The notes: generated by a model from the letters alone, not told the origin. 64,000 nt of DNA from Macrostomum lignano (GCA_002269645.1 NIVC01000363.1:186001-250000), one strand, 5' to 3'; positions 17,501 through 23,500 are shown, numbered from the stretch's first letter. Translations and numbers: made by a program.

Positions 17501-20500
17501 GATGAACACGTTGGCGTCCGTGCCGGCTCCCAGCTTGTCACCAGTCTTCACGCGCACCTCGTAGACGATCTCGGACAGTCTAGACAGTGGCTTACCGTCC
17601 TTTGTCGTGGGCAGCAACTCGCGTACAATCATTTTGTCGTCCTCGTCCTTAGCTAGCCAGCGCTTGCAGTAGAACCAGTACTCCTCAATCTCCTCCTCGG
17701 CAGTCACAATTGACCAACCGTCGAAACCATCAGCTGACGTCAGGTCAGACGAGCCGTCGCCAATGCTGTCACCTCTTCTAATCGATTGCCGCTGCGATCC
17801 GGCAGCGACGCCTTCACCGGACCGAGCCGGACCGATTGTCGATCGGCGACGAGAACCGATTCCTGACGGCGAAACCATCGAGGCTGAACGTTTCTGCGCC
17901 AGAGCACGCGCCGACGTCAGCGACTCGGTGTCCAGATCGTCCTGATCCATTTCGGCGTCGTCAATTGAGAAGCCGCCCTCTGATTCCTCATCGACGCGCC
18001 AGAGACTTCGCTGCTGACCTCTTAGTGGAATCATGGAGTTAGCCCGTCGTCTGAGGGCGTCGCTGCCAGGCCGGACCGACGACCGACGACTCGCTCGCCC
18101 ATCGCCATCCTCAAGGCTGTCCGTAAGAGCAGCGCGTGATGGTCGAGTTGAATAGCGCCGTCCACTGGGCGACGACGATGGAGGCTTTTTGCCCCTAGAC
18201 GAAGATGGCAAATCATCATCACTATCGTCAAAGTTATCGTCGTCGTTAAAGTTCTTGCGATTATCGGCACTTCTTAACGGGGCTTGCTTCACAGATGAGC
18301 GTCGGCGGTCACCAACAGAAGACGATGGACGGCGTAAAGTACCCCTTCGAGAAGAGGCTCGATCTCCAGCCTCATCTTCACCGTCTATGTCCGAGTCGTC
18401 CTCTTCGTCATCAAAAGGACTGGGTCGCCGTCCTCGTCCATGACTTTTTGAACTCTGCACCGCGGATGACCGACGCCGCAATCTACTGTCTCGTCTGCTG
18501 TCTTTGTCATCGTCGTCATCGCCAATTGAAAGACGCAGATCGTTATCCTCATCGTAAGGCGATCGAGAGCGAGACCTAGTGTTGCCCGCAGGCGATGAAT
18601 CTCGACGTTTCTTAGCCGACGCCGGTCGGACAGACGGCCGCCGGGCCCCGGTTTTTTTTCTGCTGCTGATGTCATCTTCGTCTAGGTCAACCACTCCGTC
18701 CTCGTCTTCGTCGTCTTCATCGTCGTAGTAGTCTTTTTTGTAGGGCTCCGCAGCGGCAGCAAATGACTTTCTTCGGTTGAGCTGCTGTGATTGTGCCAGC
18801 GACAAGGAGCGGTTGCGAGCCTGAGAGCTCGATTTCCGATTAAGTTTTAGTCGACGCGATCCGCGCAGCGCGTGACGCCTGATGAGCACGTGCTCAAGGA
18901 ACCATCCGTCGCCGAAACCTGTACCGTCGTGTCCAATGCGAATCTTCTGAATTGGTCCGACGTCGATAAGATCCAGCTTGAAGCGATCCTCTTTGCCCTT
19001 CTCGAAGTTGTCGGAGCGGGATCGAAGCAGCGTCTGGTCAGTCTTGAGCCCATCTTCGCCGTAGATTTGCACGAAAACGGCCGCGTCTGTGCCGGCGCCC
19101 TTGCAGTCGCCGGTTTGCACGATTATCTCGTACGGAATGGCTTGAATTAGGGAATTGGTGAGGCGGGGTGCAAAACAAATTTTTAACAATGAACTTGAAA
19201 ATATGGTACAACATTAGCTATAAGGTAGTCAAATATATAGAGGTGGGGACAGGGGGGCCTACGTCCGTCTGGGCCACTTGAATCCCATGATCAGTGAAAT
19301 AGTTTCTTACTTCGTTCGATATCCGTAACTTCGCTGCAGTCGATATCGATTTCCAGTTTCCGATCGGCCTCGTTAGTGTCCAGCCAGCGGTGCGCGGCGA
19401 ACAGGTACTGCTTACCGCGGGAGGGCACGGCGATGCGAACCCAGTCGAGAAACCAGCCTGAATTTGGCAGGCTGCCATCGTGGCGAATCCTGATGCGCTC
19501 CAGCTGTGGAGTGGATCAAAGTTGATGAATACTTCAAGTCGGTCGAAGGGAAACTTAAATTTCTTACAGAAAAGCATCATCTTCGAAATAATAGGTACTC
19601 TCATGTTTTAAATAACCTGTCCTAAAAACATAATTCCCAAAAGTTCCCTTGCATTTCTTGCATTTTTTACCCGATAACTAGCTAGTGGACTAGTGGATCG
19701 GACAATTCTGTTTGCAGCCCTGTCGTAACTACCAAGCGTATAGATTTAACCCCTGATTCCTGCCAACCAATAGAAAGGCACTATTTTTAGCGCAAGAAAC
19801 TGGTCATTTGCGTTAGCCAATCAGAGATCCCAGAACAGTCTGCCGCATCTCGAGCTCTGCATTCTTTTCTTCTCTAAGCCATCTTCCTTCATTTCGGATG
19901 ATTTTCTTTCTCTCTCTCCCTAAAAGCAGAACGGCAGCAGCATATAAAACACGTTACACACGTCGACAGATAAATTTTTCTTTCACTTTCCGAGGAACCC
20001 AAGCCTGGTTTTAGTTGGAGTTTCTCTTTTATTTTTGAAATACTTTCCTCTAACTGACTAGCTACAGCGCAGCTGAGGCGTAAAAGGTATGAGCATAGAT
20101 TGCTTTGGTGATACCGTTATGCAGCAGGAATTTATGCGCTCCTTAAGCTTCATGGTTTTAAAATCAAAAATCCACTTTCAGGGCGCAACGTAGACAATGT
20201 GGCGAATCGCTATTGCATCGTTTCTTGCTTTGGTCTGCGCCTGCAGCTTGGCCGAGAGCCAGGTGGCGCTGAATGACGCCGACCTAGACGGAGCCTGGTT
20301 CGCTGATGGACTGGCGGATGCGACCATTCCAGTTAGCGAGGAAGCAACCGACGTTGTTGTGGATGACGATAATGAGGACAGCGACGACTTCGAGAAGCGT
20401 GCAGGACTGCTGCACTTCGGCAAGAAGCGCGCTGGACTTCTGCACTTCGGCAAGAAGCGTGCTGGACTTCTGCACTTCGGTAAACGTGCTGGACTGCTGC

Positions 20501-23500
20501 ACTTTGGAAAGAAGCGTGCTGGACTGCTGCACTTTGGAAAGAAGCGTGCTGGACTGCTGCACTTTGGAAAGAAGCGTGCTGGACTGCTGCACTTTGGAAA
20601 GAAGCGTGCTGGACTGCTGCACTTCGGCAAGAAGCGTGCTGGACTGCTGCACTTTGGAAAGAAGCGTGCTGGACTGCTGCACTTTGGAAAGAAGCGTGCA
20701 GGACTGCTGCACTTCGGCAAGAAGCGTGCTGGACTGCTGCACTTCGGCAAGAAGCGTGCTGGACTGCTGCACTTCGGCAAGAAGCGTGCTGGACTGCTGC
20801 ACTTCGGCAAAAGCGTGCTGGACTGCTGCACTTGGCAAGAAGCGTGCTGGACTGCTGCACTTCGGCAAGAAGCGTGCTGGACTGATGCACGATCAAGACA
20901 ACAGTCTGTACGACTTCTACGATGACGAGAATAACTTTGAGGAGTCGAACTAAAGAATAACACTCAGTCAGGCTCAAGAAAATCGAAAACGCCGCGCTCT
21001 GGACAGCAAAATAAAACATTTTTGTTTCTGTAATAAGCCTGCACCGCTAAGAAATGTCTTGACCATCAAAACCTATTCACGCTTTTACCAGCTTGTCAGC
21101 TTGTTTGAACGCTAAACAACCCCCAAAACAACAATTTTAACAGCTGAAAATTAATTTCTCGAATAAATCAACCGATAAAGCCGAAATTGTGGCGAGAGGC
21201 GGCATCAGAAAATCACAACAGATCTTTACACTTTAACTTTTTCTCTTCTAATGTTCTAGAGCACAATACTTAGATGTAAAATTTTAGTCCCGATTTGATT
21301 GCAAGAAAATTATTGTTTTACGAGCTAGGTTAGTGAGTTAGGCGCGACACCACTCGGATCAACCAGTGGGTGGCTTCAAAGCACAGAGAGAGGTGGGCTA
21401 ACGCTCCCGACTGCCGGCAATCCCGCGCGGCAGTCCCCTGTCCTTCCTCCGCCCTCCGCAGGGCCCTGCTTGGACTCAACCGCAGGGACATCAGGGCGGT
21501 GACCATGGCCCTCTCGGATCATAGCTGTTTTGCCAAGCATCGTCACCTACAGGGAAAAATCCGTAGTGAGGTAGTGCGCTGCCCTTTTTGCCTCTCCGGT
21601 GTCGAGAATGCGGAGAAATTCATCTGTGAATTCCCTGTCTTTACTCAGGATGTTTTCAGGCCCGAGAATCTCTACCAGCTCGTCCGCTACCTAAAGGCTA
21701 CGGACGAGCGATCATCACCTCCTGGACTCTCCGGAGGGGGACCGCGCTGCGGATACCGGCATCACTGGTACTCAGTCTTCACCGAGTACCGGCACAGCTG
21801 CCCGTGGTCGCCAGGGGTTAGCGAAATGGGGCGGGAACAAGGTTGAACTGTCAATTGCACGACTCACCTAAGTCGTGTTGGCCAGCAATAGCTAGCGGTA
21901 AGCTTGGCAGTGACACTGAAAGATAAACTTAGTAGACAATTTTCTATACCATAATGCTCTCGGTTCAATATTAACTCTGTTTCTGTTGCCAGAGCATCTA
22001 AGCTTCCTTAGATATTTACCTTGCTAGTTAGTTTATAAATAGATTTCAAAATGGGGATACGCTCGTATTGTCAAGCTCTAGTTCATGGCGCAAACCTCTC
22101 CTATGTCGGGACTCTCAATTTTGAACATGTCGATTCTGTTCCTCTCGAATTTGTTAAGCGCCGAGTCCGACGCCCGCAGCTGACGTTCGCCTGTCTCGCC
22201 ATTCTTGCCGAATATGGTCAGGAATACGTTGGCGTCGGTGCCTGCGCCTGCCACGTCGCCAGTCTTTACTGAGACGTTGTAGGACATCTCTGCGGTAGGA
22301 AAAAAGGAATTCTCAGGTTGAATTTCCTTGACATCGCTTGGTGCATAATGAACTTCATTTTGCATTGCATAAACATCATCAAAATCTTTCTTTTCAACCG
22401 CGTTTCTACGAGCACAAGATCAAAGCGTACAAAAATAGCAAAGTACATCACAAACCAAAACTCATTGCGTCAGGCAGGGCAGGCATAAAAGCAAAGCTAC
22501 AGGGGCTTTAAATATATCATATGTATTGTCGCGACTTTCTTAGTCGTTTTTAGTTCATCTGTACTTGTCTCTGTTTACTCTGTTTTCTCTCCCTCTCTGT
22601 TTGGTTCAGTCTTGTTATTTTCTCTCTCTCCCTCGCTGCCTTCTGATTGGCTCGGCCTCTTTCTTTCGTCACGCACTCCACCCCTCCTTGTCTTATCTAC
22701 ATGTACACTCACCCCCCCCCCCTAATTAAATGCCATATAAATTTACGCATTTTGGGCCCTGTGTCCCCTCTTGCGAGTGGTTTTGTTTAGTTTAACAAAG
22801 ACAATTAAGTGAGGATGAACTGAGAATTGACTAAGAAAGTTGCGACATGTACGAGCGCGTATCAATATGCATAATGGCGCGACATGCCATTGGATCGGCG
22901 CAAATTCGAAATTCAAAGCCTCAGAGAAATTGATGCCGTTGCCGCAGAAAACTCAGAGTGAGCTCAGAAAAAAGCTCAGTAAAAACTCACTGTCGAGCAT
23001 AGATCCGATGAGAGTCAAATCTCTCTCGATTTGACCGTCGTCTTCATTCTTGTCCAACCATCTGGTAAGGAGAAGGTATGAAAGTAAATTATGATGATAT
23101 CGCGTAGAATTTGTAGATAAAGTTAGTACAGACGCACTATGGGTGCACCCAAGGCTTTTCACACAAGTTCAAAATTTCACAACGTCGAAAATTCAAATAG
23201 CAGCCACTTTCACTGGGTCGAAAACTTAATGTAACAAAAAACATGCAGTAGTTTTCGGCGTTGTGAAATCATTTGCTTTTCGACGTTGTTAAATTTCGAC
23301 CCTGTCAGAGTACCCCTTCCCAGATACAGCTACTAACCGTTTAAATTCATCATAACTGGTAACTGAGTTTGAAGCCTAAATGGGAAATGCACTTATAGTT
23401 AACAATGTAAAATCGGAGCAGTAAACCATAGAAATGGCATCGCAAGAAATTGGAGACACTCGCATGGCCCAGAACGGAGAAGAGGCGGAACAACATCTAC

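What the first reader, a model, noticed from the sequence alone, without database searches (positions are those of the whole stretch)
20197..20953. Nested antisense neuropeptide gene encoding 16 copies of AGLLHF-amide
The precursor has textbook prohormone grammar: signal peptide, acidic propeptide, KR/KKR convertase sites, Gly amide donor and an acidic tail. It predicts one hexapeptide, AGLLHFa. The L-x-F-amide end resembles LRFamide/FMRFamide-like peptides with His in place of Arg, and echinoderm L-type SALMFamides, but I do not recognise the exact peptide. It sits on the opposite strand inside intron 10 of a LOXHD1-like gene, so a probable neuronal signal is embedded in a probable sensory-cell gene. 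This is the best candidate here for an undescribed signalling system.
Basis: partly seen in the sequence, partly recalled or inferred. Interest (0 to 1): 0.82.

Follow-up and report, generated by a model that had tools for sequence, protein, structure and literature searches.

The report
Flatworm multi-copy AGLLHF-amide neuropeptide precursor gene
A small gene inside an intron of a LOXHD1-like gene, in a genome that looks like the flatworm Macrostomum, encodes a typical neuropeptide precursor with 14 in-frame copies of AGLLHF-Gly; the claimed 16 need two 1-base gaps repaired, and it is a new member of a familiar class, not a new signalling system.

Summary
Window 20197-20953 (+) holds a 30-bp tandem repeat (16.8 units). 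It follows an ATG, a 19-residue signal peptide and a 47-residue acidic propeptide with no basic residues.

In that frame every intact unit reads AGLLHFG(K)KR. All five variable repeat columns are synonymous third-codon positions. No other ORF in the window shows this pattern.

The sequence as assembled does not encode 16 copies plus an acidic tail. Units 14 and 15 each lack one base. The literal ORF (20197-20925) gives 14 copies, 13 of them with full dibasic flanks. Unit 16 and the acidic tail are out of frame. These deletions are either assembly errors or real; I cannot tell which.

The gene lies antisense inside a canonical GT-AG intron (19504-22095) that splits a PLAT domain of a multi-PLAT, LOXHD1-like gene. 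"Intron 10" could not be verified.

A neighbouring gene family points to Macrostomum, probably M. lignano.

No homologue or literature record of AGLLHFamide was found. Close analogues are described: acoel ASALHFamide (LxFamides), a polyclad "XHFamide" precursor, and chelicerate xHFamide FMRFamide-like peptides.

Verdict: a genuine precursor gene and a new member of a known kind, of moderate interest.

The parts
20197..20253 (+). Start codon and predicted 19-residue signal peptide [19 protein letters not shown]. Layout: n-region with Arg3, hydrophobic core, and small residues Ser/Ala at -3/-1.
   Evidence: The best 10-residue Kyte-Doolittle mean is 2.82, in the top 3% of the 108 ATG ORFs in the window. 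An in-frame TAG at 20191-20193 lies just upstream of the ATG. No SignalP-type tool was available, so the cleavage site is inferred.
20254..20400 (+). Acidic propeptide (47 residues: 17 Asp/Glu, no Lys/Arg/His), ending in the first dibasic site, Lys-Arg (20395-20400).
20401..20816 (+). Fourteen in-frame units encoding AGLLHF-G-(K)KR. Units 1-13 have complete dibasic flanks. Unit 3 has KR instead of KKR through an in-frame 3-nt difference. Unit 14 is followed by GKS because of the first 1-nt deletion, between 20810 and 20811.
20817..20875 (+). Units 15 and 16. Unit 15 carries the second 1-nt deletion, between 20833 and 20834. Both units are out of frame with the ATG as assembled. Unit 16 is an intact [10 protein letters not shown] unit in frame +1.
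20876..20953 (+). Degenerate unit 17 (AGLMH...) and the acidic C-terminal tail [20 protein letters not shown] with its TAA stop. These are readable only in frame +1, that is, only if the two deletions are repaired.
20923..20925 (+). TGA that ends the literal ORF from the ATG. The resulting 242-aa product has the tail [38 protein letters not shown].
20087..20181 (+). Putative 95-nt intron in the 5' UTR: donor AAAAG|GTATGA, acceptor TTTCAG|G 15 nt before the ATG. The acceptor could instead be a spliced-leader trans-splice site. A TATA-like GATAAAT lies at about 19969-19975.
   Evidence: Read directly. This is inference only; no transcript data were available. 38.8% of M. lignano genes are reported as trans-spliced (PMC5730564).
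21010..21015 (+). AATAAA polyadenylation signal, 57 nt after the TAA at 20953.
   Evidence: Read directly. Its function is inferred.
19504..22095 (-). Host intron (2592 nt) of the LOXHD1-like gene. Donor GAG|GT is at 22096/22095 and acceptor CACAG| at 19504/19503. The intron splits one PLAT domain (...IESPDIGE | [10 protein letters not shown]...).
   Evidence: No part of this intron is repeated elsewhere in the window.
22096..22293 (-). Host exon upstream of the intron, encoding the N-terminal half of a PLAT domain.
   Evidence: Pfam PLAT positions 1-67 of 117, E = 1.3e-11; tblastn block.
19311..19503 (-). Host exon downstream of the intron, encoding the C-terminal half of the same PLAT domain. 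It ends at ...ER|GTAAGA.
2561..32577 (-). Extent, within the window, of PLAT-coding blocks of the multi-PLAT (LOXHD1-like) host gene.
   Evidence: 24 merged tblastn blocks; Pfam PLAT hits. The best database relatives are rotifer multi-PLAT fragments at 42% identity, and one hit is named lipoxygenase homology domain-containing protein 1.

Best explanation
This is a prepro-neuropeptide (peptide hormone) gene of a Macrostomum flatworm.

Proposed mechanism:
1. The product enters the secretory pathway through a 19-residue signal peptide.
2. A prohormone convertase cuts at the KR/KKR sites.
3. A carboxypeptidase trims the basic residues.
4. Peptidylglycine alpha-amidating enzyme converts the C-terminal Gly into an amide. 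Each precursor then yields many identical copies of the hexapeptide AGLLHF-NH2 (monoisotopic [M+H]+ 656.388).
5. The peptide most likely acts on a G-protein-coupled receptor of neurons or muscle, as flatworm FMRFamide-like peptides and the LxFamide/SALMFamide-type peptides do.

Shown here: the reading frame, the repeat structure, the processing layout, purifying selection on the peptide frame, and the nested position.

Inferred: secretion, processing, amidation, neuronal expression and receptor type.

As assembled, the gene yields 13 fully flanked copies plus one copy with an incomplete C-terminal site. With two 1-nt deletions repaired it yields 16 copies plus an acidic tail. I rate assembly error and real mutation as about equally likely. 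The product is the same peptide either way.

The gene is an independent transcription unit that happens to sit antisense in a 2.6-kb intron of a LOXHD1-like gene. I see no evidence that this position has a function.
For: Repeat and ORF structure:
- 30-bp repeat x16.8.
- ATG ORF with signal-like N-terminus, acidic spacer and AGLLHFG(K)KR units.
- 15 intact AGLLHFG-coding stretches against 0.06 expected.

Selection on the peptide frame:
- Among 13 intact 30-nt units, all five variable columns are third-codon positions and all are synonymous (P about 0.0018 for position alone).
- Only this frame of the six gives a single peptide.
- The only length variant inside the in-frame part is a 3-nt one, KKR to KR.

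Internal controls:
- Only 1 of 108 ATG ORFs of at least 60 aa in the window has four or more G[KR][KR] sites, although the window is full of minisatellite ORFs.
- Its N-terminal hydrophobic score is in the top 3%.
- An in-frame stop lies directly upstream of the ATG, an AATAAA lies 57 nt after the stop, and plausible splice signals sit in the 5' UTR.

Organism and machinery:
- A neighbouring single-exon gene family matches a Macrostomum lignano protein at 71-81% identity.
- M. lignano has a neuronally expressed PC2 homologue whose RNAi is lethal (PMC4490696).

Analogous precursors:
- Acoel ASALHFamide: signal peptide, acidic spacer, KR, then identical hexapeptide-G-RK units; the peptide is 4/6 identical (PMC6188537 supplement).
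- Bona fide FLRFamide, PGVLRFamide and xMHFamide precursors were pulled out by the repeat grammar alone.
Against: - No transcript, peptide or orthologue was found. There were no hits in the 5.8-billion-protein search, and only repeat-driven analogues in the exhaustive 1.84-billion search.
- Nothing was found in JGI metagenome contigs, and no exact gene record exists.
- Two 1-nt deletions break the frame before the last two units and the tail. This copy may therefore be damaged.
- M. lignano is a recent hidden polyploid with much duplicated sequence, so redundant decaying copies are expected.
- Signal-peptide cleavage and the promoter were not tested with dedicated predictors.
- All six frames of the repeat are open, so ORF length alone carries no weight.
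Confidence: 0.72

Rival explanations
1. The two 1-nt deletions are real and this locus is a damaged, redundant copy (homeologue or paralogue) of an AGLLHFamide precursor gene on its way to becoming a pseudogene. The functional copy lies elsewhere in the polyploid genome.
For: - There are two uncompensated frameshifts 23 bases apart.
- About 6.6 kb of long host-gene ORFs in the same window show no frame breaks, so the assembly is not generally full of indels.
- LamG paralogues C and D carry one-nt indels, and D also carries substitutions of conserved residues. This looks like true pseudogenisation in this region.
- M. lignano has 180-312 Mb of duplicated sequence (PMC5730564).
Against: - Thirteen fully flanked copies, the signal peptide and the propeptide are intact. 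The truncated product would still release the peptide.
- There are no stop codons or nonsynonymous changes in any unit, including the out-of-frame unit 16.
- The indels sit inside a near-perfect tandem array. That is exactly where long-read consensus and short-read polishing fail. The published M. lignano assemblies rest on PacBio CLR reads.
Confidence: 0.12
2. It is a genuine secreted multi-copy amidated peptide, but not a neuropeptide. It could be a gland, epidermal, reproductive or defensive secretion product, such as a pheromone-like or antimicrobial peptide, processed by furin/PC-type enzymes.
For: - The grammar (signal peptide, dibasic sites, Gly) is shared by non-neuronal secreted peptide precursors.
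- No expression data were obtainable.
- The His-containing hydrophobic hexapeptide has no tested receptor.
Against: - Short identical C-terminally amidated hexapeptides in many tandem copies are the hallmark of invertebrate multi-copy neuropeptides.
- The closest described precursors are all neuronal: acoel ASALHFamide (PMC6188537), and polyclad XHFamide, which is expressed in GnRH+ neurons (PMC10396302).
Confidence: 0.12
3. It is a non-coding minisatellite whose ORF and peptide grammar are a coincidence.
For: - The window is very rich in minisatellites with open frames on both strands.
- All six frames of this repeat are open.
- Tandem repeats make up about 15% of the M. lignano genome.
Against: - Variation among units is synonymous only, and only in this frame.
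- The one indel in the in-frame part is 3 nt.
- An ATG plus signal peptide plus acidic spacer sits directly upstream in the same frame.
- It is the only ORF of 108 with this grammar.
- The array ends in a degenerate unit and a non-repetitive tail followed by AATAAA.
Confidence: 0.02

Closest known systems
Xenacoelomorph LxFamide multi-copy peptides, especially the ASALHFamide precursor of the acoel Diopisthoporus gymnopharyngeus (Thiel et al. 2018, PMC6188537, supplementary file 4)
   Same: - The build is the same: signal peptide, acidic spacer ending in KR, then identical tandem hexapeptide-Gly-dibasic units.
- The peptides ASALHF-NH2 and AGLLHF-NH2 are 4/6 identical and share the C-terminal LHFamide.
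   Different: - The phylum differs (Acoela against Platyhelminthes).
- Spacers are GRK against GKKR.
- The transcripts show 4-5 copies, against 14-16 here.
- There is no similarity outside the repeat and the acidic composition: the BLASTP alignment is driven by the units.
- Homology cannot be told apart from convergence on six residues.
'XHFamide' proneuropeptide of the polyclad flatworm Prostheceraeus crozieri (Piovani et al. 2023, PMC10396302; listed again in PMC13551398)
   Same: - Same phylum.
- The name implies peptides ending in x-His-Phe-amide.
- It is expressed in a defined neuron cluster (GnRH+) of the larva.
   Different: Only the name is available to me. The sequence table is not among the held supplements. 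Copy number, peptide length and orthology are therefore untested.
FMRFamide-like peptides (FLPs/FaLPs), including the His-for-Arg variants of chelicerates (YLHFamide, ILHFamide, MLHFamide; PMC12035899)
   Same: - A hydrophobic-x-Phe-amide C-terminus.
- Multi-copy precursors with G-KR/KKR spacers.
- R-to-H replacement is documented in ticks and mites. It is also visible in precursors recovered here, with up to 41 xxMHFG/LHFG units (P0019, P0063, P0131).
   Different: - The defining Arg-Phe-amide is absent.
- The Pfam FARP model scores 7.7 bits against a cut-off of 15.5, while a true FLRFamide precursor scores 44.
- The arthropod peptides are longer, N-terminally extended and variable, not identical hexapeptides.
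Echinoderm L-type SALMFamides (SxLxFamide / LxFamide; Elphick et al. 2013, PMC3594158)
   Same: - A C-terminal Leu-x-Phe-amide.
- A sea-urchin L-type-like peptide ends in IHFamide.
   Different: - The Ser of SxLxFamide is replaced by Gly.
- SALMFamide precursors carry 2-8 different, longer peptides rather than identical hexapeptides.
- The family is defined within echinoderms and has no identified receptor that would allow an orthology test.

Membership tests
Multi-copy amidated neuropeptide precursor (generic class) | N-terminal signal peptide | tested here: inconclusive
   The n/h/c layout is present. The hydrophobic core scores KD 2.82, in the top 3% of window ORFs, and Ser/Ala occupy -3/-1. 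No dedicated predictor was available.
Multi-copy amidated neuropeptide precursor (generic class) | Repeated peptide units flanked by mono- or dibasic convertase sites, with a C-terminal Gly as amide donor | tested here: met
   There are 13 units with (K)KR on both sides and a Gly before the site. A 14th unit has GKS after it.
Multi-copy amidated neuropeptide precursor (generic class) | Selective constraint on the peptide rather than on the DNA repeat | tested here: met
   All five variable columns are synonymous third positions. There is a single peptide in this frame, against 2-3 in each of the other five frames.
Multi-copy amidated neuropeptide precursor (generic class) | Expression in neurons or endocrine cells, and detection of the mature peptide | not testable with these tools
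   No transcript or peptide data were reachable. The protein and exact-match searches were empty.
FMRFamide-related peptides (Pfam FARP, PF01581) | C-terminal Arg-Phe-amide, or a match to the FARP model | tested here: not met
   The C-terminus is His-Phe-Gly. FARP scores 7.7 bits against a cut-off of 15.5. The positive control P0163 scores 44 bits.
L-type SALMFamide | SxLxFamide C-terminal motif | tested here: not met
   G-L-L-H-F: the LxF-amide part is met, but the Ser position is Gly.
L-type SALMFamide | Orthology to the echinoderm precursor genes (taxon, precursor organisation) | not testable with these tools
   No echinoderm precursor set or receptor data were on hand. The precursor organisation differs: identical hexapeptides here, diverse longer peptides there.
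Xenacoelomorph LxFamide (ASALHFamide type) | Multi-copy peptides ending in Leu-x-Phe-amide | tested here: met
   AGLLHF-G against ASALHF-G, 4/6 identical.
Xenacoelomorph LxFamide (ASALHFamide type) | Sequence homology of the precursor outside the peptide units | tested here: not met
   The BLASTP alignment is carried by the repeat units and acidic composition only.
Flatworm XHFamide proneuropeptide (polyclad) | Peptides ending in x-His-Phe-amide in a platyhelminth | tested here: met
   The window peptide ends in His-Phe-Gly. The organism is assigned to Macrostomum through a 71-81% match to an M. lignano protein.
Flatworm XHFamide proneuropeptide (polyclad) | Sequence orthology to the P. crozieri precursor | not testable with these tools
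   The sequence table is not held.
Orexin/allatotropin | Match to the Pfam Orexin model above threshold | tested here: not met
   The score is 14-16.7 bits against a cut-off of 22.6. It arises from [10 protein letters not shown] resembling the AGILTLGKRR segment.
LOXHD1-like host gene | Protein made of many tandem PLAT domains | tested here: met
   There are 24 PLAT-coding blocks on the - strand over 2561-32577. Pfam PLAT E-values go down to 3.9e-45. One database hit is named LOXHD1.

The most novel reading that the evidence does not exclude
AGLLHFamide could be the platyhelminth representative of an ancient bilaterian LxFamide system. That system would be shared with acoel LxFamides such as ASALHFamide and with echinoderm L-type SALMFamides, whose receptor is still unknown. 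Finding it in a transgenesis- and RNAi-capable flatworm would make the receptor and the function of this system directly testable. A weaker variant is that its antisense nesting in the LOXHD1-like gene couples expression of the peptide and of a mechanosensory-cell gene.
Probability: 0.1. Interest if true: 0.6.

Novelty: new member of a known kind. Interest (0 to 1): 0.35.

Why it matters
If it is expressed, AGLLHFamide adds a high-copy neuropeptide to Macrostomum lignano. This flatworm has working transgenesis and RNAi, but no neuropeptide catalogue for it could be reached here.

The peptide is also one more data point on an open question: whether LxFamide/xHFamide peptides in acoels, flatworms, chelicerates and echinoderms are related or convergent.

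On the practical side, the two 1-nt gaps illustrate how tandem-repeat precursors can be mis-assembled or mis-annotated. That may be why no gene model for this precursor was found in the protein databases.

It does not point to a new kind of signalling system.

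Tried and rejected
Searches that found nothing useful:
- A homologue search with the repaired 252-aa precursor in 5.8 billion proteins gave no hit at E <= 10.
- Exact-product look-ups of the ORF, of two LamG paralogues and of P0015 gave no record.
- A degenerate two-unit DNA pattern found no match in JGI metagenome contigs.
- An exhaustive phmmer search against 1.84 billion representatives gave 430 hits. 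The top 150 (the only ones listed) are repeat-driven: spurious repeat ORFs, or other neuropeptide precursors such as FLRFamide, PGVLRFamide and xMHFamide. None has AGLLHFG units.
- Literature searches for AGLLHF, GLLHF, LLHFG and (L)LHFamide found no neuropeptide paper with this peptide.
- The planarian prohormone supplements (PMC2953531) contain no xHFG[KR].

Sources I could not reach:
- McVeigh 2009, McVeigh 2011, McVeigh 2012 and Koziol 2016 are not held. Prior listing of the gene as an M. lignano npp gene therefore cannot be excluded.

Ideas rejected:
- Membership in Pfam FARP and Pfam Orexin; both score below threshold.
- Rfam and tRNA scans gave only a SINE-derived tRNA-like hit far from the locus.
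- A tiny intron removing the frameshifted units. The candidate GT..AG pairs span about 30 nt or less, and removing units 14 and 15 (58 nt) would not restore the frame.
- The gene being part of a repeated or transposed element. The host intron has no copy elsewhere in the window.
- Organism identification through the LOXHD1 exon. It gave only 42% hits to rotifers. The LamG family gave the Macrostomum match.

Full report
**1. What is in the sequence**

Tandem Repeats Finder reports a 30-bp unit repeated 16.8 times at 20393-20890, with 94% matches. On the + strand an ATG at 20197 is preceded by an in-frame TAG at 20191-20193. It opens a 242-codon ORF ending at the TGA at 20923-20925. The product has three parts:
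- [19 protein letters not shown], a signal-peptide-like segment.
- A 47-residue spacer with 17 Asp/Glu and no basic residue, ending in Lys-Arg.
- Units that read [10 protein letters not shown]. Unit 3 reads AGLLHFGKR.

Splitting the array unit by unit shows 17 units. Units 1-14 are in frame with the ATG.
- Unit 14 (20788-20816) is 29 nt, with GGCAA-AAGCGT in place of GGCAAGAAGCGT.
- Unit 15 (20817-20845) is also 29 nt, with CACTT-GGC in place of CACTTCGGC.
- Unit 16 is an intact unit but lies in frame +1.
- Unit 17 degenerates (AGLMH...) and runs into [20 protein letters not shown] and the TAA at 20951-20953.

As assembled, the ORF gives 14 copies. The last is followed by GKS instead of GKKR, and then by an out-of-frame Cys-rich tail.

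**2. Is it more than chance?**

ORF length means nothing here. All six frames of the repeat are open, and the window is crowded with minisatellite ORFs. Four other observations carry the weight.
- Among the 13 intact 30-nt units, the only variable columns are 3, 9, 18, 21 and 30. All are third-codon positions in the [10 protein letters not shown] frame and all changes are synonymous. That frame yields a single peptide, while the other five frames yield 2-3 variants each. The probability that five variable columns all fall on third positions of one frame is about 0.0018.
- The only length change within the in-frame part is 3 nt (KKR to KR).
- Of 108 ATG ORFs of at least 60 aa in the window, this is the only one with four or more G[KR][KR] sites (it has 13). 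Its N-terminal hydrophobic segment ranks in the top 3%.
- The degenerate pattern for AGLLHFG occurs 15 times, against 0.06 expected.

The frame carrying the peptide grammar is also the frame that carries the ATG, the signal peptide and the acidic spacer. I conclude that this is, or very recently was, a protein-coding gene selected for the peptide AGLLHF-Gly.

**3. Gene anatomy (inferred)**

Fifteen nucleotides upstream of the ATG there is a good acceptor, TTTCAG|G at 20181/20182. A donor, AAAAG|GTATGA, lies at 20086/20087. Together they would define a 95-nt intron in the 5' UTR. A TATA-like GATAAAT lies near 19969-19975, and an AATAAA lies at 21010-21015, 57 nt after the TAA. The acceptor might instead take the spliced leader, since 38.8% of M. 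lignano genes are trans-spliced (PMC5730564). None of this could be checked against transcripts.

**4. Surroundings**

PLAT-domain coding blocks cover the - strand from 32577 down to 2561. Pfam PLAT E-values go down to 3.9e-45. The nearest database relatives are rotifer multi-PLAT fragments at 42% identity, plus a protein named lipoxygenase homology domain-containing protein 1. "LOXHD1-like" is therefore a fair label.

The peptide gene sits in one intron of this gene:
- The upstream exon ends ...IESPDIGE|GT at 22096/22095.
- The downstream exon starts CACAG|[10 protein letters not shown] at 19504/19503.
- The intron is therefore a canonical 2592-nt GT-AG intron that splits a PLAT domain.

The predicted peptide transcript (about 20000-21035, + strand) overlaps no host exon. 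The intron contains nothing that is repeated elsewhere in the window. Nested antisense is confirmed. "Intron 10" is not: I count at least seven PLAT-coding blocks upstream within the window and did not define the gene's 5' end.

**5. Organism**

The precursor itself has no relatives in the databases. A tandem family of five single-exon PAN + LamG_3 genes lies at 40-53 kb. It matches UniRef A0A1I8I643 (LamGL domain-containing protein, Macrostomum lignano) at 71-81% identity, with long identical stretches. The window's very high minisatellite content fits the 15% tandem repeats reported for M. lignano. I take the source to be a Macrostomum flatworm, probably M. lignano. This rests on one protein family only.

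M. lignano has a neuronally expressed prohormone convertase 2 homologue that is essential for postembryonic development (PMC4490696). The processing machinery assumed below therefore exists in this animal.

**6. The two frameshifts**

Both are single-base deletions 23 bases apart, and they do not compensate each other.

For assembly error:
- They lie in a near-perfect tandem array, where long-read consensus and short-read polishing are weakest.
- The published M. lignano assemblies are built on PacBio CLR reads.
- Everything else about the array is under clean coding constraint, including the out-of-frame unit 16.

For real mutations:
- About 6.6 kb of long host-gene ORFs in the window show no frame breaks.
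- LamG paralogues C and D carry two and three 1-nt indels. D also carries substitutions of conserved residues, which looks like genuine decay.
- The species is a recent hidden polyploid with 180-312 Mb of duplicated sequence, so redundant copies are expected.

I cannot decide between these and rate them about even. The biological reading barely changes. The literal ORF still releases 13 fully flanked AGLLHF-Gly units.

**7. Mechanism**

The mechanism is inferred from established prohormone biochemistry. It involves signal-peptide cleavage after Ala19 and convertase cleavage at KR/KKR. Carboxypeptidase trimming follows, then amidation using the Gly. The result is AGLLHF-NH2 (monoisotopic [M+H]+ 656.388).

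By analogy with flatworm FMRFamide-like peptides and with LxFamide/SALMFamide peptides, the most likely action is on a GPCR of neurons or muscle. Secretion, amidation, cell type and receptor are all untested.

**8. Comparison with known families**

- Exact peptide: it does not occur in the searchable literature or in planarian prohormone supplements.
- Closest described precursor: ASALHFamide of the acoel Diopisthoporus gymnopharyngeus. It has the same architecture, a 4/6 identical peptide and the same LHFamide end (PMC6188537 supplement). Similarity outside the units is nil.
- Same phylum: an "XHFamide" proneuropeptide is named in the polyclad Prostheceraeus crozieri and is expressed in GnRH+ neurons.
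- His-for-Arg FMRFamide-like peptides: these are documented in ticks and mites. The exhaustive search itself pulled out long precursors with up to 41 xxMHFG/LHFG units.
- Formal membership tests fail or cannot be run. Pfam FARP scores 7.7 against 15.5 bits, with a positive control at 44. Pfam Orexin scores 14-16.7 against 22.6. The SALMFamide Ser position is Gly.

It works like an LxFamide or FLP-type multi-copy neuropeptide. Family membership beyond [quoted passage not shown] is not established.

**9. Novelty and score**

The gene is real and the peptide appears unlisted in what I could search. I put the chance that it is already catalogued at roughly 40%.

It is a new member of a known kind, not a new signalling system. 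The nesting in a LOXHD1-like intron carries no demonstrated meaning. Interest 0.35.

The most novel reading not excluded is that it represents a bilaterian-ancient LxFamide system in a genetically tractable flatworm. I give that a probability of about 0.1 and an interest of 0.6 if true.

Noticed in passing
window 40067-41014(-), 42536-43462(+), 44280-45207(-), 48154-49164(+), 52036-52986(+): A tandem cluster of five single-exon secreted PAN/apple + LamG_3 paralogues. A central stretch is identical at the DNA level in all five, which suggests gene conversion. Copies C and D carry two and three 1-nt indels. The best database match is the Macrostomum lignano LamGL protein A0A1I8I643, at 71-81% identity.
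   Followed up: partly
window 61584-61913, 38464-38724, 43742-44000, 8927-9135(-): A tRNA-derived SINE-like element in four copies, 89-93% identical. One copy gives the only Rfam gathering-score hit in the window (tRNA, 61779-61848, - strand). ARAGORN calls no tRNA.
   Followed up: partly
window 17132-19189 (-): A 2-kb exon of the LOXHD1-like gene encodes two PLAT domains separated by about 400 residues of acidic and Ser/Arg-rich, apparently disordered sequence.
   Followed up: no
window 4133-4847, 6128-8005, 10450-13790, 35755-36960, 45451-47483, 59841-61014, 62585-63855: Minisatellites and a long trinucleotide tract are exceptionally dense, each open in several frames. Several lie inside introns of the LOXHD1-like gene. 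This is consistent with the 15% tandem-repeat content reported for M. lignano.
   Followed up: no
window 172-522(+), 56966-57367(+), 37108-37731(-): Fragments of other genes: an EF-hand (calmodulin-like) ORF, a MatE/SLC47-like exon and a RING-finger ORF.
   Followed up: no
window 20401-20875 (+), peptide level: The unit [10 protein letters not shown] gives a repeated sub-threshold match to the AGILTLGKRR segment of Pfam Prepro-orexin: 14-16.7 bits against a cut-off of 22.6. I judged this a six-residue coincidence.
   Followed up: yes
window 974-1324(+) and 21370-21846(+): These ORFs look by eye like C-terminal fragments of non-LTR retrotransposon proteins. The second lies about 400 nt downstream of the peptide gene, in the same host intron. 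Pfam gave no hit for either.
   Followed up: partly
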